A stretch of DNA of 64,000 nt from Mobula birostris (GCF_030028105.1 NC_092379.1:23615821-23679820), one strand, 5' to 3'; shown: positions 4,531 through 26,333, numbered from the stretch's first letter. Notes: generated by a model from the sequence alone, not told the origin. Program-made: numbers and translations.

Positions 4531-4609
4531 ATGAAAGTACACTTCTATTAATTCGCCTTCGGACTTTCACATCTTCGTTAACAGACCAATAAATTCAAAT
4601 CAATGACAG

Positions 4610-4931: not shown

Positions 4932-4994
4932 TCGGTACAATAATCACTCGAGTTCCAGCTCCAAATATTATCTGTTGGCTGCCTCCAAAATTCA
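4932..4994 (-). CDS. TRAJ: TRAJ, intact (module type A)
   Basis: NFGGSQQIIFGAGTRVIIVP; CACAGTG(4995)-12-ACAAATACA; GTAAGT. Confidence 0.92.
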
Positions 4995-5374
4995 CACAGT
5001 GCCTGCCCCCCTTACAAATACACCTACTGGCCTTAACAATCTCCACTAGCCCTTTCCCAAATAACAATGCATTGATCGCAATACCCCCTAAACCTAAGAT
5101 GTGTGTTAGTCATCTGGTCTTTATTTTTATAAATAGTTTTAAAATATTTTTAATAACCTTCTCTTCCTGTGGACACCACCTCCAAGGCTGCCCCACTCTG
5201 CTGCTGAGTTCATTTCAAACCGAACATCCACAAAACAACCCAGAATGAAACAAGATTTATTTGCGCAATCGTGTTATAGTTGTGTTTGTTATTATTTCTC
5301 CTAAGACTTCTACGGAGCTTCGATTTTCAACATTTTAGTTTTGTTCTTCCTCATTTTTTAGTTGTTTGCTCGCC

Positions 5375-5570
5375 CCAACACTTCTGTAATGTGTTTCTCC
5401 CAGAGTGTTTTGGTTTTCTCCCAGATCCCAAGGATGTGCATTACGGTTAGGTGACTGGTATACACTGCTTCCTGCCGAATTACTGGAAAGTGGGGAGAAG
5501 TGGTTACAGGGAATATTTGAGAGCAAATGCAAATGGCCTCCCCTTAAGTCGTATGGAAAGAAATTCCTTT
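5375..5570 (+). mobile_element. SINE (HE1-like), part of duplicated module
   Basis: ggttttctcccagatcccaaggatgtgcattacggttaggtgactgg... Confidence 0.6.
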
Positions 5571-5614
5571 TGCCCATTCTCTACATCCTTATTGGCCCTC
5601 TAATAACTTTCATC

Positions 5615-5820
5615 CAAAAATGGAGAATAGCGGAAAACAAAACAGCGGGTCAGGCAACATCTCTGGAGAGAGAACTAGCGAACATTTCAGGTCGGAGACC
5701 CCTTGTTAGAACAGAGAAAGGGAGAAGACAGGATGGGTTTCCGTTTTAGGGATGGATTGGACAACAGGATGATGATGTTAGCTGCCTGACTTCTGAATGA
5801 CTGCAGTGTTTTCTGATTCT
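5615..5820. mobile_element. Penelope-like inverted-repeat element, part of duplicated module
   Basis: Arms cagcgggtcaggcaacatctctggagagaga / gctgcctgacttctgaatgactgcagtgttttctg; homologous copies near 15100, 17460, 20175 and 24455. Confidence 0.55.
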
Positions 5821-6268
5821 TTCTCCAATCTCACGCTTTCAGAGATATTCCCAGTGATTACACCATTCGTCCCTTATCAATTTTGCAACGTTAATCTGCT
5901 TTCTTTTTTTTTCATCCTCCCTGACTGAACTACAGTACCCTCAATTCCATAAATACGTAAGGATCATATTCCAAATGGGGCAATATTTATCTCCTATAAA
6001 TCAATCTGTATGTAAGGAGGCTTTCTCTGAATTTTCTACTAGATTAACAAACTATTTAGATATTTTGATATGTACTATCATATTGATATGGTGAACATCT
6101 CTTTAACTTTATGCATTTTTCTATCTTATCAAACCCTTGTACAGAGGTTACACACTGGACACACCTTTTCCTCTCAATCATGCATAATCTTTGCAATTTT
6201 CTTTGAATGCCAAGACTCTGATATTTGTCACCAAAGCAACATTTTTTAACACCGAAAGTCGAACTTAC

Positions 6269-6325
6269 TAGGTTCCACGTTCAGCTTGGTTCCAGATCCA
6301 AATGTTATGACATTGAAGGAATCCA
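6269..6325 (-). CDS. TRAJ: TRAJ, intact (module type B)
   Basis: DSFNVITFGSGTKLNVEP; CACAGTA(6326)-12-ACAGAAACA; GTAAGT. Confidence 0.92.
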
Positions 6326-6459
6326 CACAGTACTACACACCAGTACAGAAACATGCTTCTGGTCTCAGGTTCTACATACGCCACAGAGTCTTACATTCAC
6401 AAAGCACAATTACAGACCCTTCGGCCAGTATTGCATGCTGCCCATCAGATAAATATAAG

Positions 6460-7030
6460 ACAATAATACACAGGAACAGAATTAGGCCATTCGGCTCGTT
6501 GACCTTCCGCTATTTCATCATGACTGATTTATTATCCCCGTCAACCCCCTTCTCCCCGTGACCTTTGAAGCCCTTACTAATCAACACCTATCAACTTCAT
6601 CTTTAAATATGTCCATGGACTTGGCCTCCACAACCACCTGTGGCAATGAGTTCCACAGATTCACCACCCTCTGGCTGAAGAAATTCCTCCTCATCTCTGT
6701 TCTAAAGGGAAGCCCTCTAATTCCTAGGCTGTGCCCTCTGGTCCTAGATTCCCCATTATAGGAAATATCCTCTGCGTATCCCTTCCATCTAGGCCAATAT
6801 ATATTATGCAGGTTTCAATGAGACCCCCTTCTGCCGTTCCTCAGAACTTCAGCGAATACAGGCCCAGAGCCATCAAACGCTCCTCATGCGTTAAAGCTCT
6901 CATTCCTGGGATCATTCTCGTGAACCTCTTCTAGACCTCTCCAACGCCAACATATTCTTTCTTAGATAAGGGGGACCAGAACTGCTCACAATATTCCAAG
7001 CAAGGTCTGATCAATACCTTAATAAGCCTT
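6460..7030 (-). mobile_element. CR1 LINE 3' end
   Basis: Reverse complement of the CR1 3' terminus (ggcaatgagttccacagattcaccaccctctggctgaagaaattcctcctc...). Confidence 0.85.
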
Positions 7031-7738
7031 AGCATAAAGTATTAAGCCTTATTATAACCTTCCACTCCTATTATCCTACACTTGATCCATAGCCTTCTAT
7101 GGAGTAGTGATTCAAGAGCCTGTCCACATACTTGTTAGTTTTGTAACTGCCTCCACCAAGTTCTCAGACAGACTGCAATCCCTCCCTGAGTGAGAGAGTT
7201 GGCTGGTAATAGTTGTCTCCTGTGTGTGGCTGAATGGCAGATTCTGGGGAGATGTGAGAGGAGTATTTGGAGCATGGATGGGATTTTGTGAGTTAAGTGA
7301 AACTGGGTAGTTGATGATCTACACAGGTTTGTGGACGAAAGGTCTGTTTCCTTGCTATATGACTGTCACTCATTGGGCATTGGCGACTCAAGTCCTTAAT
7401 TGCGCGAGAGTCCCTGTCACTATCACTTCTTCAGCAGTGCCTGCCAGATTACTACATACACTGCATAAATAGAATTTCTTCTTTGTACCCCATTTAAACA
7501 TTTACTGGTTACTCTAAGTCTATGCCCAAGTTATCATTATGAATTATGATTCACAGAATTCACCTAAGATTTTATTTGATGAATGAAATTAGTGTGGATT
7601 CAGTTGCTTCCATGGTTTTGGAGCACCTAATCATGTTATGAGAAAGCATAGATGACGTCCATTACCAACAGCATATCATTTGATCTGAATACCGAATGTG
7701 ATTAGAATCTAATAATGAATACTGTATTGATAACTTAC

Positions 7739-7801
7739 CAGGTTTAACAATAAGCCTTGTGCCGTTTCCAAACACTAACTTGTCGATCCCCCCGGAATTC
7801 A
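7739..7801 (-). CDS. TRAJ: TRAJ, intact (module type C)
   Basis: NSGGIDKLVFGNGTRLIVKP (seen in ORF 7662-7868); CACAGTA(7802)-12-ACAAGAATT; GTAAGT. Confidence 0.9.
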
Positions 7802-8093
7802 CACAGTAAATGAGCCCCTGACAAGAATTCATTTCAGTGGCTCCCCCCTTGTGCGCTATTGGCACCACATATTTATTTCAAACCTTAAAATAACTTCATC
7901 TATTTGGTCATTTTCGTTGCCTAGTTGAGGGAATAATTGGTTTCATATTTGGAGTAATATTCATTAAAAGTATAATGCTTACTAGGACCCTCAATTTATC
8001 AAATAACTCCTCAAAATACAACCACGGATTTCGAACTTTTGATACACTCTTGCACTAACTGGAGGGAAACGAAGTGAGATACTCAGCACTCAC

Positions 8094-8153
8094 TGGGCTC
8101 TGCAATCACCCTGTTGTCTCTTCCACAGATTAGCTGGTTGCTTGCATAATTCA
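8094..8153 (-). pseudogene. TRAJ: TRAJ pseudogene (type D)
   Basis: NYASNQLICGRDNRVIAEP (FGXG lost); heptamer GACAATG; donor GTGAGT. Confidence 0.75.
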
Positions 8154-8276
8154 GACAATGCTGAACACTTAGAAAATAAAACTTTGACAATCGAAGATTG
8201 GCTGATTGAAGCAATAATGTAGATAACTCCACGTTTTAGATACTTATATCATATATGTATTCAAAGCATAAGGAAT

Positions 8277-8400
8277 TATGCAGATGCTAGAAATCCATAG
8301 CAACATACACAAGATGCTGGAAGAACTGTGCAGATCAGGCAGCATCCGTGGAAGTGAATGTTTTGTGCCGAGACCCACCTTCATGACTGGAGCAATACAT
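8277..8400 (-). mobile_element. Penelope-like element arm
   Basis: atgcagatgctagaaatccatagcaacatacacaagatgctggaagaactgtgcagatcaggcagcatcc. Confidence 0.6.
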
Positions 8401-8766
8401 ACTGTGCACGTATTGAGCTGTTGTCAGCTGCTGTCCCTCACTTTCCCTACATCACGTTCTGTCTCTTTCTATCTGTCTCTCAAATTTTTATCTCTGCCTG
8501 TTAACCTGTCCAAACTCTCCAGCCACCCATAGCTTCCTTTAACAGGGGTGATAACCAGTTAATTACGAGTACAATGTTGGAACAATCCTGAAAACGGGGA
8601 ATTGGTTGGTTGTCCAGATTGTGCGGAAAACCGTGTTCTAAATTAAGATACAGCGGCCACATCTCATGGCATTGCCATATTTGCTGTAAGGCTGCAATTA
8701 GAATAAATGACAGTTATATTTAATTTCAATAGGAGTTGTAAGTATGATTGCTTTCTTAACACTTAC

Positions 8767-8829
8767 TTGGTACAACAATTACTCTAGTCCCCGTTCCAAA
8801 TATTAACTTCACGTTGCTAGCAGAATTCA
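8767..8829 (-). CDS. TRAJ: TRAJ, intact (type A)
   Basis: NSASNVKLIFGTGTRVIVVP; CACAGTA(8830)-12-ACAAATACA; GTAAGT. Confidence 0.92.
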
Positions 8830-9832
8830 CACAGTACCTGACCCCCTTACAAATACATCTACTGGCTTTAACCATGTCCACAATGCCTTCTTCTAAGAAA
8901 ATGAAATGTAGCGACAGCAACGCCCATTAAACCTCAGATTTTTCTCGTCAATCTCTTCGCCTTTGGTAAATAATGTTTAATTATTTTCCAGCTATTTAAT
9001 TCCTTTGAATCTGTGCAATCATGTTGCATAAATGTATTGAATTCCAGAAAATAATGCAACATAATTAAAAGTAAGCAAGATTTATCTGGGCTCTGGAAAC
9101 AAAATAACTGCCAGTGTTTGCACGTGATTTTCTGTCGTTTCAGAGTTTTCTGTGTATCTATGATTCCCAGCAAAAAGTTTATAGGTGAAAAATTGAGTAA
9201 CCTCTTCGCTGTTCACTCTCATTTGTTCAGAGATTCCCTCTCCCCCCACGGTGCACTTTCTCCAATCTGAGAAAGAGCGAAGACTAGTTAGCTTTAAGTT
9301 TTAGAGAGGGTCACGTAGTATGGATTGGACAACTGGAGGATGATGTCATTGTCTGAATTCCGTGGGTTTCTAAATTGTTTCTGATCTCACACTCTCAGAG
9401 ATATTCTCAACGACCCCACCATCCCTTCCTTATCCTCATCTGAAATTTTAACCGGTTTTCTCAGATTCCTCCTTCCAAAACTGATCTCATTACCTTCAAT
9501 TCCTTTAACACCCAACAATCACATTCAAAGTGATAGGGAAAGCACCTACAGGAGAGCATTTTTATATCTATATTTTCCAATGAATTAATAAGCCGTTGAG
9601 TTATTTGTTTTTTTTTACTACATTATCTAAATGTTGAAAAGCTCTTTAAGTTTAGGTTGTTTTGGTATCCCATCAATCCTTGCACTGTAGTCAACTACAA
9701 AGACACACCCATCCACTCAATCATTCCTAATCTCAACAATTCGCTTTAAATGAGTAGAACATGATATATATTAACAAAATAAAATTTGCAGTCTTCAGAA
9801 TTTCGACGCATCACATGATGAATTGGCCTTAA

Positions 9833-9861
9833 TGGGTTCCACCCTCAGTTTGGTTCCAGAT
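9833..9861 (-). pseudogene. TRAJ: 5'-truncated TRAJ relic (type B)
   Basis: Only SGTKLRVEP remains; RSS and 5' half deleted; donor TTAAGG. Confidence 0.7.
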
Positions 9862-10090
9862 TAGAAGCTATAGTTGCGAATTATCAATCATATACGTTCA
9901 AATATTCATCTTGCATTTTACCTGATGAATCAATTCAGTGCAGCCCGAGTTATCTTCCCGTATTACTGATACCTAAGTAGTTTATGACAAAATATAGCTG
10001 ACATCTATTGGTGTCTATTTCCCAGTTCATGTCAGGTTGCTCAAGTTACAGAATGGGATTGGAATCTAATTTTGAATATTGATAACTTAC

Positions 10091-10153
10091 TAAGTTTAAC
10101 AATAAGCCTGGTGCCGCTTCCAAACTCTAATTTGCTGAAGAGTGCAGAGACCA
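10091..10153 (-). CDS. TRAJ: TRAJ, intact (type C)
   Basis: VSALFSKLEFGSGTRLIVKL; CACAGTA(10154)-12-GCAAGAACA; GTAAGT. Confidence 0.85.
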
Positions 10154-10453
10154 CACAGTAAATGGCTCTTTTGCAAGAACACATTTCAATTGCTGCTCCC
10201 TGTGCACTATCGGCATGACATATTTAATTCCAGCAGTAAAATAACTTCATCATCTACTTCGTAATTTTGTTTGACAGTTTAGGATAACAGCTGCTTTTCC
10301 GATTTGAGGCACTGATCATTCAATGGAAAGTGTTATTGGGACCCACAATTTATCAACACTTGATGAAATTATGAGTAGAAGTTTCCAATTATTAACGCAC
10401 TCTTGTACTAACTCATGAAAATTACCAAAGTAGAACATAGATTCAGCACTTAC

Positions 10454-10513
10454 TGGGTTCCACAGTCACTCTGGTTCCACTTCCAAATATTAGTTTTGTG
10501 CCTCCAGCATCCA
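10454..10513 (-). CDS. TRAJ: TRAJ, intact (type D)
   Basis: DAGGTKLIFGSGTRVTVEP; CACAGTG(10514)-12-ACAAAATTC; GTAAGT. Confidence 0.92.
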
Positions 10514-10984
10514 CACAGTGTTCAACCCTCTTACAAAATTCTCCCTGCCTATCCAATATTGGCAGACTGTGTGAAACAATATTGCAGATGGATACTCAGT
10601 GTATCATATTTATTATATATATATTGTCTTCTATACTTCCGTCTGCGCACCTTCCTCTCTGTTCCTCGCTCTTATCTCCCCGCTCTTCCTCTCTCCCTCT
10701 CTCCAGCTCCATCTAAACGTATTAGTGTCTCCTCGTCTGTCTGCAGTTTTATTTAACTTGCAAACCTGGAGCAAAAACTCTGAAAATGCGAAAATAATTT
10801 TATGATAGAATGTATTAAGTGACATACTCTTTCTTGATGTGGGCCATTAAGAAACATAGTATATTACCTAACAGGAGATGAGGTTACATTTACATTTTTT
10901 CTGAAGTCTTGTTTTTAGAATTTATAAGATGGTTTGGAATTTTAATCAAGAATTCTAGGGAAGAATGGGTTTTTTGAAACTTAC

Positions 10985-11047
10985 TTGGTTCGACAATTAC
11001 TCGAGTTCCAGTTCCAAATATTAACTGCCAGCTGCCTCCAGAATTCA
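10985..11047 (-). CDS. TRAJ: TRAJ, intact (type A)
   Basis: NSGGSWQLIFGTGTRVIVEP (in ORF 10890-11123); CACGGTG(11048)-12-ACAAATACA; GTAAGT. Confidence 0.92.
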
Positions 11048-11619
11048 CACGGTGCCTGCCCCCTTTACAAATACATTTTCTAGTCTTAACAATATCCCCG
11101 TGGTTTTCTCCCAAATAATGCAATTCAGCGACCTCAATGACCCTGAAGTTTCATTTTTTCGTCAATCTGGCCTTAGTTTAGGAAGCAATTACAATAATTT
11201 TCACACCATTCAAATTCACTTCATTGCAGCCCAAGTTCCTACTCATAAAGTCACTAAGTTCCTGTTCAACTTAGTCTTCACACACAAATATATCATAATA
11301 AGAATACATGGTCCCGTACATGATTTATCTATGGGACCTAAAGGAAATAATTTTAATAGCTTGTGTGTGTTTTGTTTCATCTTCAGTGTTCCCTCTGTAT
11401 TTTTTTTTAATCCCGGTAACAGGTGTTTAGGTAACACAATAAAAATATATGGTCCCGTGATTTATCTATGGGCCCCGAGGGAATTAATGTGTAAGATTGT
11501 GTGCGATTTTATTTTCCCTCAGAGTGCCATCTGCATGATTAATTTCTATAAGCAGGTGACTAGGGTGAAAGATATTGATGTAACTTCTCTTGAATATGCT
11601 CGGGTAGTTCCCCCTTACT

Positions 11620-11840
11620 GTCCTATGGGTTTGATCGGGTTATCCCCAGTGTTTCCAACATCCCACAGATCTGCAGGTCGGTAGATTAGTTGATAGGTGT
11701 CAACTGCGCTGAATGATAATGGAAGGTAGAAGTGTTTGAAATTCTCGGAATAGAAGTCACAAGGAAAAACTGTGGAGGAATTTGATTGCTTTGTGAACGG
11801 CAGAGGTTCTTGTGCTGACTAGACTTCTTGAATGTCGTTT
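11620..11840 (+). mobile_element. SINE (HE1-like), module copy
   Basis: gtttccaacatcccacagatctgcaggtcggtagattagttg... Confidence 0.55.
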
Positions 11841-12421
11841 TGAAATAAATCCCCTTTGCCCTCTTTCTAGAAGGTTTACTTTCTTATTGACCTGATCAAC
11901 ACTTTAATTCAAAAACAGTGAACTGGGAAGCAAAAAGGCAAGCTGGGGTTAACTTCTGAGTGTTCCAAGCATTTTCTGATTTTTTTTTGTCCCCAAATTC
12001 ATCTTGTCGGAGACATTCCCTCTGACCCCTTCATCCCTCCGCAGCCACTCTGCGACTTTAACTTGTTTTCTCTTTTCACTTAACCACACCAGAAGAATTA
12101 CCCTTAAGTCAATAAATGCTGAAGAATCATATTTAAAGTGACAGTGGATATCTCCTATAAATCATTCTCTGGGTACAGAAGCTTCCTGTTAATTGAATTG
12201 GTTATTTATTATGTATTTTCATAGCACCACGTTTTGAATTTTCTTTTTAGCTTGCGTATTTATATCCATTTTATCAATACCTAGCATAGAAGTCACCCAC
12301 TCCGACAAACCTCATCTTCTGATCACTACAAGTTACTTTTACGGCACCAATATGACGCTGATCATCAAATTTCATTGTGAATTCCTGGCATGTGAGACAT
12401 TGCATAATAAACCAGACTTAC

Positions 12422-12478
12422 TGGGTTTCACCTTCAGTTTGGTTCCAGATCCAAATGTCAGTACATTCATGTTATTCA
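12422..12478 (-). CDS. TRAJ: TRAJ, intact (type B)
   Basis: NNMNVLTFGSGTKLKVKP; CACAGCA(12479)-12-ACAGAAACC; GTAAGT. Confidence 0.92.
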
Positions 12479-12761
12479 CACAGCACCACAGACTTGTACA
12501 GAAACCCCTCACCTAGTCCCAACTTCAACATTCATTCCATCTAGAACAAAACAGATCATTCAGCCATATGAATACATACTTATTTAAGTCCCCTTCCATT
12601 GCATCTGATGAATTAATGTTGGTAGAATGGTTTTCACGTGTTATAGCACTTATGAATTTAATGGTAAGATATCACTGAAATCTACTGTGATCCTTTACAT
12701 ATCCCATAATATATTGACCAGGATATAGAATTTCTTTAAACATCGATTTTGAATATTAACA

Positions 12762-12823
12762 CCTGAACAAGATAAAGAATTCTGGTGTCACTTCCAGCAT
12801 TAATTTGCAGAGCTCACCAGAAC
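12762..12823 (-). pseudogene. TRAJ: Degenerate TRAJ relic (type C)
   Basis: tctggtgtcacttcc matches cctggtgccgcttcc of the 10091 J at the syntenic module position; frameshifted, no RSS or donor. Confidence 0.5.
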
Positions 12824-13346
12824 GAAGAGAGCAACCACCTCTCCTTCTCAAGAGCTCAATTTATTGGCTGCTCAATGTGCATTGTTGTCTTTGGATATTT
12901 CACTTCGAAGATTAAAGACTGACAATTTAGGAAAATGGATTATATTAGATTTTGGAGCATTATTCATCCGAAGTCCAATTGATACTGGGGTCCATGATTT
13001 ATCAAACACCTCAATAAAGCAGATGCATGACTCTATACAAGAGAAAATCTCACTCTACATCAGTACATGTGAAATAATCAACTAATTTACGAATAATGAC
13101 ATTATTTTGTACTAACTAATCGAAACTACAAGTGGAAAATCACAGAACCAAGAGTAGGAATGAACAACAAGGAAATTATTCTTTGGCCGGCATCAAATGC
13201 AGAACATGGTTTACAGAATACATTTTCTTTTCCAGCTGAGGAGATCGATCACATGAAATTTATAAGCGCGATCATTTAAAATAAATAATAATAATAAAAT
13301 GATTTAACCTGCAGTTCTAGGAGAAAATGCATTTCGCAGCACTTAC

Positions 13347-13409
13347 TTGGTTGGACAATTATTCGAGTCCCAGTTCCAAATAGTAACCCCGTGCTGGCTG
13401 TATTATTAG
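13347..13409 (-). CDS. TRAJ: TRAJ, intact (type A)
   Basis: NNTASTGLLFGTGTRIIVQP; CACGGTG(13410)-12-ACAAATACA; GTAAGT. Confidence 0.92.
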
Positions 13410-14045: not shown

Positions 14046-14114
14046 AATAAATTCATTTTGAACCATCCCAAAAAATGTCACATCCTTATTGATCCACTAA
14101 TTAATTCCACTCAG

Positions 14115-16985: not shown

Positions 16986-18284
16986 CACAGTGCCTGGTTC
17001 CCTTACAAATACACCCATTGGGTTTCATTAGAACAGTCATCCTCTAAACATTACATGGCTTCTTAAGGCTAAGAATGCTTCCTCAATCCACACTATTTTT
17101 TTTCTGAATAGGTTGAAATCTTTATGAAACCTCTCTAATTTCCTTGACTCCAGCCCTATATCTGCACTATACAACATCGAATTTCTGTCCAACGTAATTC
17201 CCACAAAATAATTTAGCAAGAAAAGAAAATGGCAATGTGCATAATCCAAAGGAAATCAGTGCACAGGTATCAATGAAATTTTATTCCTTCTCAGAGACTC
17301 TCTGGATATGTGATTCTCAGTAGAAAAAGTTCAGAGTTTATAAAGATTTCCCTCATTTCCCTATTGTTTGCCCTTACTCACTTGGCCCTGTTAAATTCCA
17401 TTTTCATTTTCCCTAGAATCATTACACCTTCATTGAACAATTAACCAATTCCATTCAATTCAGAGAATGGTGGTAACACTCAGCAGGGGATACACTATCT
17501 GAGAGCAGAGAGAGGAGCATGGTGAACAGCGAAGTCCATTCGCCAGAATCAGGAAAGGCATACGACACTACGGTTTTGAGCTTTAGGGAGGCTGGGGATG
17601 TTGTGGGGGGGGGGAGTGGGTGGGGAGGGTGGCGGGTGTTGGGTGGATTAACTGGTCAGCAGGAAGATGAATGCCATTCACCTGACATCTGAGTATTTCC
17701 AACATTTTCTGCATTAGTCTCCAACGTCACACAGTCAGAAATATTCCCAGTGTCCCTGCTTTGTTTGATGCACGATAGCCAATTTATTACCAGTAAAGAT
17801 GTAGCAATAATTCTGAAAATGCTAGATTGTTGTTTGTTTCCTTCCCGTTTTTGGCTGTAAGATGCTTCCTTCCCAGTCTGTCCACAAAGTGAACTTGTTT
17901 TTCTAACTTTCCTCTTCCCTGCACTGATCCCATGAATCTCAATTCCAGAAATGCTCAAAAAGCACATTCAAAGTGACAATCTACACCTCCTACAAATCAC
18001 TCTCCAGATAAGGAGGCTTCTTCTGTATTTCTATTGGATTAACAAGCTGTTGAGTTATCTGCTACCTTATTTTAATAGTGGCATATTTTGAACAGCTTTT
18101 TAAATAACTCCTGTTTCCCACCTCAGAAACCTTGCACAGAATGGACTCAGCACGATACACCCACACTAGCAATCACTAATAATCTCTATAATTTGTCTTT
18201 AATGACGATGAAAAATGCACATAAAAGCAAAACTGCATTTTGCTCTGCAGAAATTAGACAAATGACATAACAAGTCGGATTTCC

Positions 18285-18340
18285 TGGGTGTTACTTCAGT
18301 TTGGCCACAGATCCAAATGTTATCACATTGAAGGTATTCA
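18285..18340 (-). pseudogene. TRAJ: TRAJ pseudogene (type B)
   Basis: NTFNVITFGSVAKLK* ; TACAGCA-10-ACAAACACT; donor GGAAAT. Confidence 0.8.
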
Positions 18341-18647
18341 TACAGCACTGCCAATATACAAACACTACCCACACCCCAAATTCAACTTACGTTATGAAGA
18401 CTTAGATTTCTAGAACACGAAGCAGTTTCTTTGGCCTACCATGTCCGTGTCAATTTAAATTAAAATACCTAGATCTCATTTTATATGATATATCATATCT
18501 GTGTAGATTAAGTTCTTTTCCCCTATTAGTAGTGATGTATGATGCAGCATATAACTGAAATCTCTTGGCGCCCATTGCCTACTTCATGTTAGGATGACTA
18601 GAATATCGAATTTGTTTGAAACATGATTTTCAATATTAACATCTTAC

Positions 18648-18705
18648 CGGGATTAACAATAATTTAGGTGCTGCTTCCAAACAGCAATTTATTGAGCACT
18701 GAATT
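18648..18705 (-). pseudogene. TRAJ: TRAJ pseudogene (type C), RSS deleted
   Basis: NSVLNKLLFGSST*IIVNP; donor GTAAGA; no RSS. Confidence 0.8.
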
Positions 18706-18979
18706 TAGTGGCCGTTACCAGTGCACTATTATCATTGCCAATTACATTTCTAAATACTAAAATCACTTCATCACAGATACGGCAAGTGGATTTGATTAGG
18801 TTGGAGAAAATAAAGCTTATTTTGAAACATCATTCCTGCAAAATACAATGCTTGCTGTGACCTAGATTTCAGAAAATTCTCCCTGTAAGTATAAAGACGG
18901 GTTTCCAACCATTAATCAGCACTCGCACCAACAGATGGAAACTGAAGTGGGAAATTGCAGTAGGAATGTCAACACTTAC

Positions 18980-19039
18980 TTGGTTCTACCGTCACTATGG
19001 TTCCACTTCCAAATATTAGCTCGTTGCCTGCATAACTCA
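18980..19039 (-). CDS. TRAJ: TRAJ, intact (type D)
   Basis: SYAGNELIFGSGTIVTVEP; CACAGTG(19040)-12-ACAAAATAC; GTAAGT. Confidence 0.92.
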
Positions 19040-19412
19040 CACAGTGCTCAACCCTCTTACAAAATACAGCCTTCCAATGCAATATTAGCTAACCGTTGAA
19101 GCAATAATGCAGATAGGCACTCATTTTAGCGTATTTATTTTCCATATGTATTAGTCAATCGGTATGTCCGCCTGTGCATCTATCTGAATCTCACTGCTGC
19201 TTTATAGCTTCCTCTTACTTTACATATCCATCTTTTTTTTTCTTTCTGTCTGCCTATCTGGATATTTTCTGCCCCCTCCTGTAGCTTTGTTTAACCTAGT
19301 AACAGGGAAACTTATTAGTGAAACTTATCATTATTTATGATCAGGGAAAATGAGGCAATAACTCTGAGTACTCGACTATTTTTTGTTGCTGATTGGCCTT
19401 CTCAGTACTTAC

Positions 19413-19475
19413 TTGGTTGAACAATTACTCGCGTGCCGGTTCCAAATATTAACCCAGTGTTCCCTCCATAATCCA
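19413..19475 (-). CDS. TRAJ: TRAJ, intact (type A)
   Basis: DYGGNTGLIFGTGTRVIVQP; CACAGTG(19476)-12-ACAAATACA; GTAAGT. Confidence 0.92.
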
Positions 19476-19899
19476 CACAGTGCTTGACCACCTTACAAAT
19501 ACACACACTGCTTTTAGCATTGTTCACATCGTCTTACTCCACACATGCAATGTAGCGAGTGCAAACCCAACACAATTTAACATTTTTTCAAGATACTTTC
19601 ATTCTTTAAAAAATAGTTTTATCCATCTATTCAGCTCAATATCGGCCTTATGCAGACAATAGGTTCGTACGCAATTTAGCTTCCATAAGTGAAGGTAACA
19701 GAATAAAAAAAAATAGGATTTATCTGTTTGATCCAAAGAGAATCATTGCGTATATTTTTGTGTGATTTTATTGCTCTTTAGAGTTACATCTGTATCTTTG
19801 ACTCTCAGAAAAAAAAATCTGTATGGCTGAAAATCATTTCCGTAATTTTTCTATTGTTCGCCCTTGTTTGCTCAGTCATTTCTCTCTCTCCGCCCTGCC

Positions 19900-20110
19900 T
19901 CCCTAGGGTGCTCTGTCTTTTTCTCACATTCCTAAACTATGCGAGATGATAGGTTAGTAGCCCACTGTGAACTGCTCTAAGTGAGGTGCGAGAAAGAATT
20001 GTCGAGGTTATGGTGAGAAAAGGTATTAAAGAAAATTTGATGAGGGATTGATTACTATATGAACAGACCGAGACACTTTGGCGTGACTGGCCAGCTTCTA
20101 TGTCTAATGC
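19900..20110 (+). mobile_element. SINE (HE1-like), module copy
   Basis: agggtgctctgtcttttctcacattcctaaactatgcgagatgataggttag... Confidence 0.55.
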
Positions 20111-20837
20111 TAATATATCACTTTTGCACTCTCCTAGCAATCTTCCCAAAGTTATGGACGTAGTGTTATCCATTGAAAATTAGCTAATACAGGAAGATTT
20201 CAACAGGTCAGAGAGCGTCTGTGGAGACAGAAGCAATGAATGCTTCAGATCAAAAGCCTTTGATCAAAACTGGGAACGAGAGAAGAGAGGTTTTGGTTCT
20301 GGGCATGACAGAGATTCGGGGAGAGTGGACTGGATTGCCATCTGCCTAATCCCTGAGGTTTTCCAGTATTTTCTGAATTTGTCTCCCATCTCACTCCGTC
20401 AGAAATGTTCCCAGTGACCCTAACATCCCTCCCTACCTCCTCTGTATCTTTGAATTGATTTATTCAAATTTGTATTCCCTACACTGACCCCACTACCCTC
20501 AAGACAGGAAATGCCCAAGAATCTTATTCAATTTAACAGTATGCACCTCCTGTAAATTATACTTCAGACAAGGAAGCTTCCTTCGTATTCTCTGTTGAAT
20601 TAGCACACTGTTGAATTAATTGGCTACTCATTACTGTAGTCTAATGGCTAGGGATTTTGTACACCTCTTAAGTTGTTTTTATTTCTATTTTATTAAACTT
20701 GTGCACAAGCACCTACTATAATACTTTCCAGTACCCAATCTCTTTTAATCTCTAACGTTTGCTTCTAATGCCAGCAACCTGACCTCCATCAGCAAAACTG
20801 CATAAGGTACCTAGGCTGTAGTGACACAACCTAATAA

Positions 20838-20920
20838 ACTTTCTTCACTAGCTTCAGATCAATTTGTCAGCACATTGAAATTATACTCAACTCAAAGCAC
20901 CATAGACCAGTATAGAAAAC
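20838..20920 (-). pseudogene. TRAJ: Degenerate TRAJ relic (type B) with decayed RSS
   Basis: NFNVLT then degenerate; CAAAGCA-12-ATAGAAAAC; paralogue of the 15823 pseudogene. Confidence 0.55.
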
Positions 20921-21210
20921 CCTTAGGTGGTCGCAAACTCAACCCACGTTATAGGCTCTTCGATTTCCCCGGCATGAGATAGGCTTACGGTCCAGCACTT
21001 TCAGGCTTATTAAGTTAACTTTAAATTAACATCGATAATTCCATCCGATAAGTTGGATCTGTGTGGATTTTAGTTGTCTATAAGTGTTAGCGGAGCATAC
21101 GTAAGTTAATAAAATACAAATGAACTCTTCCAGCGCCCACTGCTTACATCATATTATATTGACCAGAATATAGCACTTGCTTGAAACTGAATTATAAATT
21201 GCCACCTTAC

Positions 21211-21273
21211 TAGTATTCGAAATATGTCTGGTGCCGAGTTCGAAAACATTTTAGTCCAGTCCTCCAGAAACCG
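21211..21273 (-). pseudogene. TRAJ: TRAJ pseudogene (type C)
   Basis: VSGGLD*NVFELGTRHISNT; CACGATA-13-ACAAAACTC; donor GTAAGG. Confidence 0.8.
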
Positions 21274-21578
21274 CACGATAAACGACCCGCCTGACAAAAC
21301 TCTGTTTCGTGACTGCTTCCTGTGCACTATTGTCATTGATTATTTTATTTCAAAGAAACATTCATCACTTAGGAATTTTTTCTTGATACGTTGGCAGAAT
21401 AGTTTACTTTCAGATTCCAGGCATCATTCATTCAAAGTACAATAATTGTTACTAGGACCCACAATTAATTAAATGCCTCCTCAAAATATAACCACGAATG
21501 GTCAATTATTGACAAGCTTTTTCACTCACAGATGGAAACCATCAATATAGACCACATATTAGGGATGTCTGCACTTAC

Positions 21579-21635
21579 TGGGTTCTACAGTCACCTTGGT
21601 TCCACTTCCAAATATTAGCTTGTCTCCATAGTTCA
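21579..21635 (-). CDS. TRAJ: TRAJ, intact (type D)
   Basis: NYGDKLIFGSGTKVTVEP; CACGGTG(21636)-12-ACAAAAAAA; GTAAGT. Confidence 0.92.
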
Positions 21636-21986
21636 CACGGTGCTGAACCCTCTTACAAAAAAACCCAGGACAATTTAAAACTATCTAACTGAATGAAGCA
21701 ACATGGCAGTTAGCAACTCATTTCTTGCACATTCATATTACATATCTCTGTAGCTACCTGTCTGTGTTAATTTCTCTTTCTCTCTATCTCTCTGTCTAGG
21801 GCCCACCTTCTCTCTACTTCTCAATCTTTTACTCTGTTTATCCAACTGTATATCCGTCCGTATGCCTGTGGTTTAAATTAACTTGCGTGCTGTCCAGTTT
21901 ATTATCTGTGAAGATGCAGCAACAAATCTGAAAATGCGAGATGTTTTATTTTGAGTGAAAGACAGAATGGCTTTCTCACCACTTAC

Positions 21987-22049
21987 TTGGTTTAACAATT
22001 ACCCAAGTCCCGGTTCCAAATGTTAACCCAGTGTTGACTTCATTGCCCA
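21987..22049 (-). CDS. TRAJ: TRAJ, intact (type A)
   Basis: GNEVNTGLTFGTGTWVIVKP; CACAGTG(22050)-12-ACAAATACA; GTAAGT. Confidence 0.9.
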
Positions 22050-22889
22050 CACAGTGCCTGGGTCCCTTACAAATACACCCTTTGGTCTTTGTTAGAGTCT
22101 TCCTCTGAACATTGCAAGGCTTTTGATAGCTACGGATTCTTCTTCAATCTACTCTATTTTTTTTTCTGAATAGGTTGAAATCTTTCTGAGACCTATATAA
22201 TTCACTTGACTCCTCCCCAATACCTGCAGCACACAACATCGAAATCCTGGCCAACTTAGTTCCCGGAAAATAATAAATCACGACAAAAAAAATAATGCTT
22301 ATATGTATAATTCAAAGGAAATCAGTGCACAGGTATCTATGTAATTCTATTATTCATCGGAGTGCTTTCTGCGTATATGATTCTCCGTAGAAAAAGTTCA
22401 GTGTTGAAAAAGATTTCAGTAATTTCCTTATCGTTCACCCTTACTTGCTTGCTCCTAATAAATCCCATTTTCATTTTCCTTAGAATCAACACATCCTTAT
22501 TGAACAACTAACCAATTCCATTCAAAGCAGACAATAATGGCAACACTCAGCAGGTGATACAGTATCTGAGAGAAAAGGGAGGAGCATAGTGAATAGTGAA
22601 GAGCATTCGCCAAAATTCAACCTATATTGTGGACTCTTAGATTCCAAGAACTTGAAACAGTCACTTCGGCCCGCCATGTTCATTTGTATTTAAATTAAAT
22701 ATATATACATTTAATTTTATCTAACGAATCATATCCTTGTAGATTCAGTTCTTTTCACGTATAGGTAGTCCCAATGTATGTTATTGCAAGATATAGCTGC
22801 AATCTATTGGCATCCATTACTCATTGTATGTTAGGATGGCCAGTATATCGAATTTGTTTGAAAACTCATATTCCATATTAACATCTTAT

Positions 22890-22950
22890 CAGGATTAATA
22901 ATAAATTTGGGGCCGCTTCGAAACACCAACTTATTGATCCCTGAAGATCA
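22890..22950 (-). pseudogene. TRAJ: TRAJ pseudogene (type C)
   Basis: SSGINKLVFRSGPKFIINP; RSS decayed; donor ATAAGA. Confidence 0.75.
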
Positions 22951-23266
22951 TATTAAGCAAATGATCCCCTGAGCTCGGATTAAAGGCTGTCCCAGTGTCC
23001 CCAGTGCACTATTGATATTGCTCATTTTAACCCGAATATAAAATCAACCTTTCACCTATTCGTCAAGTGACCGTCATTAATCTGGAGAAAAAAGCTTACT
23101 TTCAGATTTGAAACGTTATTCCTGCAAAATACAATGCCTGCGGAGAGTCAGATTTCAGAAAATTCTCCCTGCAAATATAGACACGAGTTTACAACCGTCA
23201 ACACACACTTCCTGCACTAACAGATGGAAACCGAAATAGAAGTTGCATTAGGAATGTAACACTTAT

Positions 23267-23326
23267 TTGGTTCTACCTTCACTCTGATTCCACTTCCAAA
23301 TATCAGCTTGCTGCCTGCATACTTCT
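23267..23326 (-). pseudogene. TRAJ: TRAJ with open frame but dead donor (type D)
   Basis: KYAGSKLIFGSGIRVKVEP; CACAGTG(23327)-12-ACAAATTAG; donor ATAAGT. Confidence 0.8.
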
Positions 23327-23676
23327 CACAGTGCTCAAACCTCTGACAAATTAGAACCTTCGAATGCAATATTAGCTGATTGCTTGAAGTAATAATGCAA
23401 ATAGCTACTTATTTTAACGTGCTTATGAATTGGCCAATTAGTATGTCCGCTTGTGTAACTATCTGAATCTCACAGTGTCCCTGCAGCTCACGCCCATCTA
23501 CATATTTATCTATTTTCTTCTTTCTGTCTAGCTGTCCGTATACCTGCCCACCTGTCGGTAGCTTTGTTTCAGTTGTGTGATTGACAATTTATTATGTTCG
23601 AAAATGTAGTGAAAATTCTGAGTAAGCGAGCTTTTTTTTTGTTGTTGTCAGATGTAGAGGCCCTATCAGTACTTAC

Positions 23677-23739
23677 TTGGTTGAACAATTACTCGAGTGC
23701 CGGTTCCAAATATTATTTCACTGTTGCCTCCATAACCCA
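23677..23739 (-). CDS. TRAJ: TRAJ, intact (type A)
   Basis: GYGGNSEIIFGTGTRVIVQP; CACAGCG(23740)-12-ACAAATACA; GTAAGT. Confidence 0.92.
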
Positions 23740-24159
23740 CACAGCGCTTGATCCCCTTACAAATACACACACTGCTTTTAACATTGTTGACAATGCCTAA
23801 CTCAGCATAATTCAATTAGTGAGCGCAAAGCCATCTCCATTTAATATTTTTTCTTCAAGATATTTTAATTTTATTAAATAGTTTCATGTCTTGTACTATC
23901 TGTCCTGCTCAATATCGGCCTCATGCAGACAATAAGTTCGTTTGCAACTTAGTTTCTATAAGCGTACGTAACATAATCATAAAATAAGATTTATCCGTAT
24001 TACCTCAAGAGAATCATGCACATAATTTCTTATGATCCTTTTCTCCTTAGAGTTACCTCTGTATCATTAATTCTCAAAAAACATCTTATTGCTGAAAGTC
24101 ACTTCCGCAATTTCTGTCTCGTTCGTCCTCATTTGCTCAGACATTTCTATCTCTGTCCT

Positions 24160-24370
24160 GTCTCCCGAGGGAGCTCCTTTTTCCTAAATCCCCAAAATAC
24201 GCGGGTCTGTAGGTTCATAGTCTACTTTGAACTGCTGCAGGTGAGGTGGAAGAAAGAATTGTCGAGGTTGTGGTGGGAAAAGGTATTACAAAAAATTAGA
24301 AGGCGAATTGATTACTATATGAGCAGGCAGAGACACAATGGCCCGAGTGGCCTTCTTCTATGTCATATGA
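24160..24370 (+). mobile_element. SINE (HE1-like), module copy
   Basis: gagggagctcctttttcctaaatccccaaaatacgcgggtctgtagg...aatggcccgagtggccttcttctatgtcatatgata. Confidence 0.6.
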
Positions 24371-25102
24371 TAATATATCACTATTGCACTCTTCCAGCAA
24401 CCTTCCCAAAGTTATTGACCTCTCAATCAATTCTATGGAAAATCACATAATAGTGGAAGAATTCAGCAGGTCGGGCAGCGTCAGTGGAGAGAGAAACAAT
24501 GAGAGCTTCAGGTCAAAGACCTTTGATTATAACTGGGGAAGAGAGAAAAGAGCTTCGTTCTGAACTTGAGGGAAGGTCGGGGCGAGTGGTTCAGAGATGG
24601 GAAGATGTTGCCATCTGCCTAATTTCTGAGTGTTTCCAGCATTTGCTGCTTTTGTCGCCAATCTTATTTTCTCAGGGGTATTCCCAGTGGCCGCTCCATC
24701 TCTTCCACAACAACTTCAACTTGATTTGTCTCTTTCTTCCTGCACCCATTATCCTGAGGTCAATAAATGTCCAAGAATCATTTTAAATTGCAGTATACAC
24801 TTCCTGTAAACTGTTCTCTGGGTGAGAAGGCGACATCTTCAATCCCTATTCGATTAATAAAATATTCACTAATTTGGCTACTTTCTACCTCATTTTAATA
24901 GTTACCAGTTTTGAATGCCCCTTGAAGTGTAGTTATTGGTTTCCTCATGTTAAACCATTGGTAGAAATCACTTAATAGGTTATACTCTCATTCACTCCTA
25001 ATCTCTACAATTTTATTTAACTAAATGTAAACCCACATCTAACACCAGAACTACATTCCGACACACATAATGTAGGGACATTATATGACGAATTGGACTT
25101 AC

Positions 25103-25159
25103 TGGGTTTCACCTTTAAATTGGTTCCAGATCCAAATGTTATCTGATTGATGTTATTCA
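25103..25159 (-). CDS. TRAJ: TRAJ, intact (type B)
   Basis: NNINQITFGSGTNLKVKP; CACAGCA(25160)-12-GCAGAAACT; GTAAGT. Confidence 0.9.
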
Positions 25160-25452
25160 CACAGCACTACACACCAGGGCAGAAACTCCTTCCCTGGTCT
25201 CATATTCAACTTTTGCTATAGAGTCTTATATTCATACAGCACAATGGAAGTTTGTTCACCATGCCCATGTTCAGTTGTTAAAACATATAAATTTCATTCC
25301 ATGTAACGAATCGGTGTAGATTTAGTTGTTTTCACATATTGTGTACTCTGTTACTACAGAAAACAGGGTAACCTTTTGTTATTCCTTTACAAATGTAATG
25401 TAAACCAGGATATAGAATTTGCTTGAAAACTAATTTTCAATATTGGTTAACA

Positions 25453-25515
25453 CGAGCATTAAGAATATTGCAGTGCCGCCTCCAAATACTAATTTGATAA
25501 GCCCTCCAGAATACA
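25453..25515 (-). pseudogene. TRAJ: TRAJ pseudogene (type C), donor deleted
   Basis: YSGGLIKLVFGGGTAIFLML; CACAGAA-12-GCAAGTAGT; the GTAAGA present in the 18648 paralogue is missing. Confidence 0.75.
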
Positions 25516-26270
25516 CACAGAAATAAATACCCTCGCAAGTAGTATTCCTCCATATCCTGATCAGTTCGGAAAATAGCTTTTTCTTTCTGCAGATCTGGAG
25601 CCTTATTTATCAAAGTACAATGCTTACTGAGATCCACAAATAATCATGCACCATCCCAAAAATATAAGCAAGGGTTTCTAATCTTTGACATACTCCTGCG
25701 CTAACTATTGGAAAACACTGAAAGAAACAAACATGAGGTGTGCCAATTTAGCGGTTCAAATTGCAAATATTAAATTGCTGCCCACATAATTTACTCCTTG
25801 CCCGACCCCTATGTATACTTCTTCCTCATCATTTTGCGATTTGCTCTAGTTCTATACGGTTATGGGAAACAGTGACATATTTTGATTCGAGTGGTTGCTT
25901 ATCCATCTCCTCCCTCCCCCGTCTCTATCAAGCTCTCTGTATATCCTTCTAGAAATGTTGCCCGTATATTTGTCTGACTATCTAGTTTTCTCCTTTTCCA
26001 CACCTTCTTTTTGTCCATCTATCCTGTTATGTATTTGCCTGTCTATATGCATCTGTTTGCATAACTGGCTGCTGGAATATGGTATTTGACTGAGTTTTGT
26101 TTGGTTGTTCTTGGTGAAATCGCCGTTGGAACATAATTTATACGCATTTTGTTTAGGAAGATACAAACTACTGCATATCCCTTGGACTTTTTAGTGGTCC
26201 AATCTATTAATTAAAGTTAGAATGTATCTATTTACTAAGTTATGAGAACTAATACCAAAATCGCACTTAC

Positions 26271-26333
26271 TGGGTTCTACAATTAGTCTAGTTCCTCCTC
26301 CAAATATCAGCTTGTTATTGCCTCCAAGATTCA
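26271..26333 (-). CDS. TRAJ: TRAJ, intact
   Basis: NLGGNNKLIFGGGTRLIVEP; CACAGTC(26334)-12-TCAAAAATA; GTAAGT. Confidence 0.9.

What the first reader, a model, noticed from the sequence alone, without database searches (positions are those of the whole stretch)
4932..26333. A four-J cassette (A-B-C-D, with embedded SINE and Penelope-like relics) repeated about 8 times
Seen: the order A (FGTGTRVIVxP, spacer cctg/cttg...ctt, nonamer ACAAATACA), then SINE and inverted-repeat element, B (N.V/I.TFGSGTKL.V.P), C (KL.FG.GTRLIV.P), D (KLIFGSGT.VTVEP) recurs. A copies sit at 4932, 8767, 10985, 13347, 16923, 19413, 21987 and 23677, with a period of about 1.7-3.8 kb, and intergenic sequence is homologous between units. 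Inference: a third of this J repertoire comes from serial amplification of one ancestral cassette, with paralogues diverging mainly in the CDR3-encoding 5' codons.
Basis: seen in the sequence. Interest (0 to 1): 0.7.

Follow-up and report, generated by a model that had tools for sequence, protein, structure and literature searches.

The report
Tandem multi-J cassette array, ray TCR-alpha
About 22 kb of this ray's T-cell-receptor alpha J-segment cluster is a real head-to-tail array of nine copies of an old cassette of four J segments, many now dead; this is the usual duplicate-and-decay way such gene clusters grow, not a new kind of system.

Summary
The repeat is real. All J segments lie on the minus strand. 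Each has a 12-spacer RSS, an FGxG frame and an AGTAAGT splice donor. The eight 'A' coordinates are exact. Between about 3.67 and 25.83 kb, 85% of non-J bases match other array sites (median 5), against 8-19% in unduplicated flanks. Only one dispersed element of about 90 nt recurs outside the array.

The ancestral unit of about 2.4 kb held four J types, in gene order D-C-B-A. No unit keeps all four intact. Intact versus total: A 8/9, B 4/8, C 2/8, D 4/7. The 'missing' members are present as relics.

An old, star-like amplification was followed by a roughly 5-kb two-unit duplication (non-J identity 75-81%).

Paralogues differ 4.5 times more at nonsynonymous sites in CDR3-side codons (omega 0.79, neutral-like) than in FR4 (omega 0.33). 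This is relaxed constraint, not demonstrated positive selection.

RNA-like contigs show V-J-C transcripts using one D-type J. A related species shares the array.

The SINE claim is not supported. The Penelope-like relic is plausible but unproven.

TRAJ duplication is already known in teleosts, so this is a new member of a known kind. An untested first-reader note of this scan (s1-146217) reports triplicated J copies just beyond the window.

The parts
3666..25830 (-). Whole tandem array: nine units (one truncated) of an ancestral cassette of about 2.4 kb, gene order D-C-B-A
   Evidence: 85% of non-J bases match other array sites, median depth 5. Dot-plot diagonals. Edge HSPs.
3772..4010 (-). 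A-type relic(s) of truncated unit U0, followed by 4002-4785, which is homologous to the A-to-B intergenic sequence
   Evidence: Weak nhmmer hits. Decayed FGTG frame without RSS or donor. HSPs.
4932..5022 (-). A J (U1), intact: NFGGSQQIIFGAGTRVIIVP
6269..6353 (-). B J (U1), intact
6420..7570 (.). Unique insert of about 1.1 kb in U1; no match elsewhere in the window
7739..7829 (-). C J (U1), intact
8085..8181 (-). D relic (U1): FGxG replaced by CGRD
8767..8857 (-). A J (U2), intact
9828..9861 (-). B relic (U2): 5' half and donor lost
10091..10181 (-). C J (U2): open frame, last codon Leu instead of Pro
10454..10541 (-). D J (U2), intact
10985..11075 (-). A J (U3), intact
12422..12506 (-). B J (U3), intact. 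The C region of U3 is decayed (12593-12916 aligns to C flanks) and the D region is lost.
13347..13437 (-). A J (U4), intact; coding end starts CT rather than TG
14735..14819 (-). B J (U4), intact
14884..15940 (-). Extra partial unit inside U4: distal A-to-B intergenic sequence plus B relic 15839-15907. U4 is two units fused by loss of C-D-A.
16164..16259 (-). C relic (U4), frameshifted
16521..16608 (-). D J (U4), intact and transcribed in V-J-C form
   Evidence: RNA-like contigs join V ends to 16576/16577 and a C exon to 16521.
16923..17013 (-). A J (U5), intact
18277..18353 (-). B relic (U5), in-frame stop
18643..18697 (-). C relic (U5), in-frame stop
18980..19067 (-). D J (U5), intact
19413..19503 (-). 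A J (U6), intact
20840..20925 (-). B relic (U6): heptamer disrupted, FG lost, 3' part deleted
21222..21302 (-). C relic (U6)
21579..21663 (-). D J (U6), intact. The orthologue in a related species is seen joined to a V end.
21987..22077 (-). A J (U7), open frame (FGTGTW)
22885..22942 (-). C relic (U7). The B region of U7 is deleted (about 800 bp missing at 22612).
23257..23350 (-). D relic (U7): frame kept, splice donor GT changed to AT
23677..23767 (-). A J (U8), intact
25103..25187 (-). B J (U8), intact
25453..25543 (-). C pseudogene (U8): FR4 scrambled, no donor. It is the positional C of the last unit.
15380..20900 (-). Left copy of the later two-unit duplication
   Evidence: HSPs at 72-77% over 2.3 kb each. 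Non-J identity 75-81%. Module trees 100/100.
20353..25093 (-). Right copy of the later two-unit duplication
26271..26361 (-).
   Evidence: Outside the C clade. Only J-length homology.
26625..26709 (-).
   Evidence: Groups with the A clade, not D. No flank homology.
14116..14222 (-). Best-kept copy of the dispersed element of about 90-110 nt. It carries the hammerhead-like core CTGACGA..GAAAC at 14182-14207.

Best explanation
The window is part of the J-segment cluster of a ray T-cell-receptor alpha gene, read on the minus strand.

Within it, about 3.67-25.83 kb is a head-to-tail array. It was made by repeated unequal crossing-over (tandem segmental duplication) of one ancestral cassette of about 2.4 kb. 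That cassette carried four different J segments, in gene order D, C, B, A, with CDR3-side lengths of 26, 29, 23 and 29 nt.

An old burst produced at least seven or eight units. These now differ by about 35-45% in neutral sequence, and their tree is star-like. Later a block of about 5 kb, two units long, was duplicated again (19-25% non-J difference).

After duplication the copies followed birth-and-death evolution. RSS, FR4 and splice donor stayed under purifying selection in the copies that survive. The CDR3-side codons drifted at about the neutral rate, which gives the receptor new junction sequences. Many copies died, mostly C, half of B, and some D.

Shown here: the array, the relics, the two phases, the selection pattern, and V-J-C transcripts using one array J.

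Inferred: unequal crossing-over as the mechanism, and use of the other intact J segments.
For: - J anatomy: 12-RSS, FGxG frame and AGTAAGT donor in about 50 J segments, all on one strand.
- Intergenic homology: 85% of 20.5 kb of non-J sequence in the array matches other array sites, median 5 sites. The figure is 8-19% in unduplicated parts of the window. Diagonals are colinear.
- Dispersed repeats do not explain it: only one element of about 90 nt recurs outside the array.
- J-type clades: C 100/99, D 97/94, B 86/90, A 83/97.
- Relics sit at the expected positions and spacings.
- Modules that include flanks pair U4tail-U6tail, U5-U7 and U6head-U8head at 100/100. Older nodes are unresolved, with terminal branches of about 0.26-0.35.
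- Non-J K2P distance is 0.23-0.31 for the late duplication.
- Selection: FR4 omega 0.33 (P = 0.001). CDR3 part omega 0.79 (not significant). N:S contrast P = 0.016.
- The A nonamer is invariant in 8/8 copies, while the adjacent spacer differs by 26%.
- Transcripts: contigs of run X3 (same species, 99+% identical) join V ends ..SASYLCAMR and ..SAVYYCALS to J 16521-16577, and join its last base to an exon reading (N)RRNPLKPSV.
- A related species (organism A) has contigs that are 95-98% identical to specific paralogues of U5, U6 and U7. Its DNA runs hold 35% of the sampled words of 4000-13400. The units are therefore not an assembly artefact, and the late duplication predates that species split.
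Against: - No unit is a complete intact cassette, so the four-J ancestor is a reconstruction from relics and positions.
- The branching order of the old units is unresolved.
- Global alignments of old units are only 47-58% identical, so their distances are rough.
- Breakpoints of the duplications were not mapped to the base, so unequal crossing-over is inferred and not shown.
- Transcript evidence covers only one array J in the same species. It comes from contigs, which cannot show absence or level.
- The constant exon is not in the window.
Confidence: 0.9

Rival explanations
1. The similarity between units comes from independent insertions of the same transposable elements (SINE, Penelope-like) between unrelated J segments, not from duplication of a cassette.
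For: A dispersed element of about 90-110 nt occurs in the array and also outside it, at 1153-1249 (inverted), 27063-27145 and 30877-30983.
Against: Apart from that element, no array intergenic sequence recurs outside the array. Homology is colinear over 1-2.3 kb and covers 85% of non-J bases. The element sits at the same relative place in U1, U4, U5, U6 and U8, so it was copied along with the cassette. J relics lie at the expected spacings.
Confidence: 0.02
2. The array is an assembly artefact: collapsed or expanded repeats, or haplotypes laid in tandem.
For: Tandem arrays are prone to misassembly. The window has one 151-N gap at 32687-32837, outside the array.
Against: Units are only 50-81% identical, far too diverged for haplotype duplication or collapse. 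Each has its own indels, relics and inserts. Contigs from another organism map specifically at 95-98% to individual paralogues. DNA runs of the same species hold 94-96% of the sampled words.
Confidence: 0.02
3. The cassette copies are kept and diversified by positive selection. The A type is preferentially preserved, and its CDR3 codons are driven to differ, because it serves a particular T-cell subset or a favoured rearrangement step.
For: A is intact in 8 of 9 copies against 10 of 23 for B, C and D together. Fisher's test on the pre-correction tally of 10 of 22 gave P = 0.045; it was not rerun after the U6 B relic raised the total to 23. The atypical A nonamer TGTATTTGT is invariant in all eight. 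All-pairs omega for the CDR3 part of A is 1.40.
Against: With independent pairs, CDR3-part omega is 0.79 and not different from 1 (P = 0.23). All-pairs values are not independent. The retention contrast is marginal and post hoc. No usage data exist for A-type J segments in the same species.
Confidence: 0.12

Closest known systems
TRAJ subgroups and duplicated TRAJ genes in teleost TRA/TRD loci: channel catfish, 125 TRAJ with subgroups of up to 12 at 75% identity or more (PMC8656973); Atlantic salmon, 128 TRAJ, 'many ... duplicated' (PMC8559430)
   Same: A large one-orientation J-alpha cluster that grew by local duplication. It contains families of similar J segments plus some pseudogenes and non-canonical FGXG variants.
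   Different: Here the duplicated unit is resolved: a four-J cassette with its intergenic DNA, nine units and two phases, in a cartilaginous fish. Decay is heavy, with about half of the copies dead. The teleost papers report J subgroups, not a mapped multi-J cassette.
'Homology units' and tandem block duplication by unequal crossing-over in TR/IG V regions (murine TRAD per Glusman et al., as cited in PMC8656973; the catfish TRDV2-TRAV1-TRAV1-TRAV4 array in four copies)
   Same: Head-to-tail repeats that carry several different gene segments plus intergenic DNA. Birth-and-death evolution follows duplication.
   Different: Those cases are V-gene blocks of 5-12 kb or more. Here the blocks are J segments in units of about 2.4 kb.
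Conserved J-alpha design in fishes: RSS positions spaced by 3 nt relative to FGXG, and a 'TG' start of the J coding end that supports microhomology-guided joining (Giorgetti et al. 2023, PMC10322711)
   Same: 47 of 50 J segments here have 23, 26, 29 or 32 nt before FGXG, and 43 of 50 start with TG. The cassette holds three of these length classes.
   Different: That work did not address cassette amplification. Microhomology-guided joining was not tested here.
Penelope-like elements with hammerhead ribozyme motifs (Cervera and de la Pena 2014, PMC4209133)
   Same: The dispersed element of about 90 nt has one copy with a CUGANGA-stem-GAAAC core. This is the only such match in 64 kb, with 0.1 expected by chance.
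   Different: There is no reverse-transcriptase or GIY-YIG coding remnant and no Rfam hammerhead hit at any threshold. The other copies have lost the core.

Membership tests
TCR alpha J (TRAJ) gene-segment cluster | Each segment is preceded by a recombination signal with a 12-nt spacer (nonamer-12-heptamer, GTG next to the coding end) | tested here: met
   49 of 50 canonical J segments have a 12-nt spacer. All array J segments keep ..GTG at the coding border.
TCR alpha J (TRAJ) gene-segment cluster | Open J frame with FGXG, ending in a phase-1 splice donor | tested here: met
   FGxG[TS] in 50 J segments on the minus strand, against 1 chance hit on the plus strand. The donor is A|GTAAGT.
TCR alpha J (TRAJ) gene-segment cluster | Dozens of J segments in one orientation (only TRA loci have this many) | tested here: met
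   About 50 canonical and about 20 relic or non-canonical J segments in 64 kb, all on the minus strand.
TCR alpha J (TRAJ) gene-segment cluster | J joined directly to V (no D) and spliced to the alpha constant exon in transcripts | tested here: met
   Contigs join ..YLCAMR and ..YYCALS V ends to J16554, and join its 3' end to an exon reading (N)RRNPLKPSV. This was seen for one array J only. Naming that exon as C-alpha rests on its resemblance to the known start of C-alpha (my knowledge). The exon is not in the window.
Tandem segmental duplication (unequal crossing-over array) | Colinear homology through intergenic DNA, head to tail in the same orientation | tested here: met
Tandem segmental duplication (unequal crossing-over array) | Paralogue trees of different modules agree with one duplication history | tested here: met
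   Met for the late two-unit duplication: the J tree and two flank-module trees agree at 100/100. The older events are star-like and unresolved.
Tandem segmental duplication (unequal crossing-over array) | Breakpoints lie in homologous sequence of misaligned units | tested here: inconclusive
   The copies overlap at 20353-20900 inside A-to-B intergenic homology, which fits the expectation, but the breakpoints were not resolved to the base.
tRNA-derived SINE | Internal pol III A and B boxes or a tRNA-like head | tested here: not met
   ARAGORN found 0. The B-box pattern found 0 matches with 1 mismatch allowed. Rfam found 0. Other SINE types need a repeat library and were not tested.
Penelope-like element | RT and GIY-YIG coding sequence | tested here: not met
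   Ten longest ORFs of 1-30 kb gave no Pfam match. Shorter, degraded fragments were not searched.
Penelope-like element | Hammerhead ribozyme motif in the repeat | tested here: inconclusive
   One core-motif match at 14182-14207(-) inside the dispersed element, with 0.1 expected. No Rfam hammerhead hit.

The most novel reading that the evidence does not exclude
The A-type J is kept under special selection. It is intact in 8 of 9 copies, and its atypical nonamer TGTATTTGT is frozen in all of them. Repeated copies spaced through the proximal J cluster might raise its odds of use in successive V-J rearrangement rounds, or might serve a semi-invariant T-cell subset. Amplification would then be adaptive rather than neutral birth-and-death.
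Probability: 0.1. Interest if true: 0.6.

Novelty: new member of a known kind. Interest (0 to 1): 0.3.

Why it matters
The finding gives a resolved example, in a cartilaginous fish, of how a J-alpha repertoire grows. Whole multi-J cassettes are copied, the recombination signal and framework are held by selection, the CDR3-side codons drift, and about half of the copies die.

It supplies a corrected J map (intact versus relic) for this part of the locus, which repertoire studies in rays will need. It also yields a datable pair of duplication phases that can be compared across batoids.

It does not change how TCR loci are understood to evolve.

Tried and rejected
- Rfam at gathering and at E up to 10 gave no SINE, tRNA-like or hammerhead family. 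The only hits were two chance snoRNA-like matches.
- ARAGORN and a B-box pattern found nothing.
- Pfam on the ten longest ORFs found no transposon protein.
- An inverted-repeat search of three intergenic stretches gave one 19-nt pair at 84%, probably chance.
- The first MAFFT E-INS-i run timed out and was rerun with fewer iterations.
- My first flank divergence figures (rows up/dn) were ungapped comparisons and are meaningless. They were replaced by aligned estimates.
- All-pairs dN/dS suggested omega above 1 for the CDR3 part of A and B. This was rejected as non-independent, and independent pairs give 0.79.
- The 'goes back 5061' joint in read laying is an artefact of the query end: the contig continues into U7 sequence outside the query and was laid on its U5 paralogue at 81% identity.
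- The constant-exon start was searched for in the window and is absent.
- The collections available for related loci hold no eukaryotic genomes, so copy number in other sharks and rays could not be measured directly.
- A fifth J relic between C and D was considered. Support is weak (3.4 bits), so it is reported only as a passing note.


Full report
**What the region is**

The window is 39% G+C and has one 151-N gap at 32687-32837.

A scan for FGxG[TS] finds 54 hits on the minus strand and one on the plus strand. Fifty of the minus-strand hits are canonical J segments. Each has a nonamer, a 12-nt spacer (49 of 50), a heptamer ending in GTG at the coding border, 18-32 nt of CDR3-side coding sequence, an 11-codon FGxG...P frame, and a phase-1 donor A|GTAAGT. 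A profile built from them finds about 20 more decayed or non-canonical J segments, all on the minus strand.

Forty-seven of the 50 have 23, 26, 29 or 32 nt before FGxG, and 43 of 50 start with TG. This is the design described for cartilaginous and ray-finned fishes by Giorgetti et al. 2023 (PMC10322711).

Contigs of a small RNA-like run from the same species (X3, 99+% identical) join two different V ends (..SASYLCAMR and ..SAVYYCALS) to the J at 16521-16577. They also join the last base of that J to an exon reading (N)RRNPLKPSV. From my own knowledge, CAMR and CALS V ends and an N-x-x-N-P start are typical of TCR alpha. With this many J segments the locus is TRA. The constant exon itself is not in the window. 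Earlier notes of this scan call the genome a manta ray; I did not test that.

**Check of the observation**

A-to-A distances are 3835, 2218, 2362, 3576, 2490, 2574 and 1690 bp.

A self-comparison shows long colinear off-diagonal matches throughout about 3.5-25.8 kb.
- In 3500-26750, 85% of the 20.5 kb of non-J sequence matches at least one other array site, with a median of five.
- The unduplicated stretches 1-3499, 26751-32600, 38701-44000 and 53201-64000 reach only 8-19%, with a median of 0.
- Only one piece of array intergenic DNA recurs outside the array. It is an element of about 90-110 nt at 1153-1249 (inverted), 27063-27145 and 30877-30983.

The repeat is real.

**Structure of the array**

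A multiple alignment of the eight A-to-A units gives a common backbone of about 2.3-2.6 kb. Departures from it are:
- a unique 1.1-kb insert in U1 (6420-7570);
- an extra partial unit in U4 (14884-15940);
- a deletion of about 800 bp that removes B in U7;
- smaller losses in U2 and U3.

A tree of RSS plus J sequences recovers four clades: C (100/99), D (97/94), B (86/90) and A (83/97).

The apparent gaps in the A-B-C-D pattern hold relics at the expected spacings (C to D is about 345-390 bp; B to C is about 280-350 bp):
- D-psi 8085-8181 (FGxG replaced by CGRD);
- B-psi 9828-9861;
- B-psi 15839-15907;
- C-psi 16164-16259;
- B-psi 18277-18353 (stop);
- C-psi 18643-18697 (stop);
- B-psi about 20840-20925;
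- C-psi 21222-21302;
- C-psi 22885-22942;
- D-psi 23257-23350 (donor GT changed to AT);
- C-psi 25453-25543 (no donor).

A strongly decayed D position follows at about 25770-25830.

At the low end there is a truncated ninth unit. It has an A relic (3772-4010) followed by 4002-4785, which is homologous to A-to-B intergenic sequence.

Intact versus total copies are A 8/9, B 4/8, C 2/8 (one of the two ends in Leu instead of Pro) and D 4/7. No unit has all four intact.

**Correction at the high end**

In the tree, 26304 lies outside the C clade and 26658 groups with A rather than D. The stretch 25.85-26.75 kb has almost no homology to the array beyond the J segments themselves. The positional C of the last unit is the pseudogene at 25486. 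The 26304-26658 spacing (354 bp) resembles the C-D spacing, so the pair may be a much older relative of the cassette. It is not part of the array as defined by flanks.

**History**

Two blocks of about 2.3 kb match at 72-77% identity: 15380-17549 with 20353-22616, and 18375-20556 with 22610-24810.

Trees of two flank-inclusive modules (C-D-A, 923 columns; A-to-B intergenic, 1356 columns) pair U4tail with U6tail, U5 with U7, and U6head with U8head, all at 100/100. The older nodes are unresolved, with terminal branches of about 0.26-0.35 substitutions per site. The J tree agrees: A16956 pairs with A22020, A19446 with A23710, D19013 with D-psi 23300, C-psi 18670 with C-psi 22910, and C-psi 16210 with C-psi 21260.

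Non-J K2P distance is 0.23-0.31 for this late two-unit duplication of about 5 kb. For old unit pairs it is 0.63-0.94, from global alignments that inflate it. Local HSPs of old pairs are 60-69% identical.

The history therefore has two phases: an old, roughly simultaneous amplification to at least seven or eight units, then a later duplication of two adjacent units.

Contigs of a second organism (X1, organism A) match individual paralogues in U5, U6 and U7 at 95-98% identity. DNA runs of that organism hold 35% of the sampled words of 4000-13400. The array, including the late duplication, therefore predates that species split and is not an assembly artefact.

Unequal crossing-over between misaligned units is the textbook mechanism and fits the overlap of the two copies inside A-to-B intergenic homology. 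I did not resolve the breakpoints.

**Selection**

Among the A copies, mean pairwise differences are as follows:

| Part | Mean difference |
|---|---|
| Nonamer | 0% (invariant) |
| Spacer | 26% |
| Heptamer | 13% |
| CDR3-side part | 37% |
| FR4 | 17% |
| Donor | 9% |

Nei-Gojobori counts on nine non-overlapping pairs of intact paralogues give:

| Part | pN | pS | omega | Test against neutrality |
|---|---|---|---|---|
| CDR3-side codons | 0.31 | 0.39 | 0.79 | P = 0.23 |
| FR4 | 0.069 | 0.21 | 0.33 | P = 0.001 |

The N:S ratios of the two parts differ (P = 0.016). All-pairs figures point the same way, at 1.10 against 0.27, but those pairs are not independent.

It is explained by relaxed constraint, and positive selection is not shown.

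A is retained more often than B, C and D. The test on the tally before the U6 B relic was found (8/9 against 10/22) gave P = 0.045. With the corrected tally it is 8/9 against 10/23, which was not retested. This is a marginal, post hoc contrast.

**Transposon labels**

The dispersed element of about 90 nt sits at the same relative place in U1, U4, U5, U6 and U8, so it was in the cassette before amplification.

Its U4 copy carries CTGACGA-stem-GAAAC at 14182-14207 on the minus strand. This is the only match to a hammerhead-core pattern in 64 kb, with 0.1 expected. Penelope-like elements are known to carry such motifs (PMC4209133). Against this, Rfam reports no hammerhead and the ten longest ORFs have no transposon domain. 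'Penelope-like relic' is plausible but unproven.

I found no tRNA-type SINE signature and no sizeable inverted repeat. A repeat library for this genome is needed to settle these labels.

**Comparison with what is known**

Large J-alpha clusters with families of similar J segments are described in channel catfish (125 TRAJ; subgroups of up to 12 at 75% identity or more; PMC8656973) and Atlantic salmon (128 TRAJ, 'many ... duplicated'; PMC8559430). Multi-gene tandem blocks are well known for V genes in the same loci.

My searches found no description of a mapped multi-J cassette array in a cartilaginous fish. Much of the literature is not in the searched library, so this absence is weak.

The mechanism and outcome are ordinary birth-and-death evolution of antigen-receptor segments. 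I rate this a new member of a known kind, with modest interest.

An untested first-reader note of this scan (s1-146217) reports triplicated J copies just beyond the window's end, diverging mostly in the CDR3-encoding part. That fits the same pattern.

Noticed in passing
window 32994-34909 and 36373-38127: A three-J block (J33101, J34447, J34804) is duplicated as J36479, J37684, J38023. Non-J identity is 77% (K2P 0.27), about the same age as the late two-unit duplication in the array.
   Followed up: partly
window 46129-48015 and 49619-51343: Another three-J block is duplicated: J46318, J47115, J47603 against the FRPG variant at 49746-49849, the FGGE variant at 50571-50669, and J50913. Non-J identity is 74-78% (K2P 0.26-0.32). 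Three separate block duplications in this window thus have similar divergence, which may mark one episode.
   Followed up: partly
window, between C and D in every unit (e.g. 21449-21496, 7959-8006, 18832-18879, 16400-16440): A conserved patch reads like a decayed J FR4 plus donor (TTT TGA GGA GGC ATT TAA TTA ATT GTG GGT CCT | AGTAAC). It may be a fifth J that was already dead in the ancestral cassette. Support is weak: the consensus scores 3.4 bits against the J profile, with a maximum of 1.6 in 300 shuffles.
   Followed up: partly
window 40549-40649, 56130-56224, 45155-45251, 51732-51821, 61560-61656: These are J-like segments with non-canonical motifs (FAAG twice, FDQG, LGSG, FGSGI). They have otherwise J-like frames and mostly keep donors. 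They are candidates for 'ORF'-class J segments, as reported in salmon and catfish.
   Followed up: no
whole window, J coding ends: 47 of 50 J segments have 23, 26, 29 or 32 nt before FGxG, and 43 of 50 start with TG. This matches the fish-type J design linked to microhomology-guided V-J joining (PMC10322711).
   Followed up: partly
window 1153-1249(-), 27063-27145, 30877-30983: Copies of the dispersed element of about 90-110 nt lie outside the array, one of them inverted. The family is unnamed for lack of a repeat library.
   Followed up: partly
window 773-861 and 546-646: J587 (C-like by motif, KLVFGSGTRLIVEP) is followed on the + strand, about 230 bp on, by a decayed J (FFGSETKIVVIP). This is another close J pair below the array, related to the pair at 26304/26658 only at J level.
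   Followed up: no
window 19413 (A19446 exon end), run X1: In the related organism, an A-type J contig continues into an exon reading (N)RHETP. The same-species contig on J16554 reads (N)RRNPLKPSV instead. This may be a species difference or a second constant gene. Cross-mapping at 90% identity makes it uncertain.
   Followed up: no
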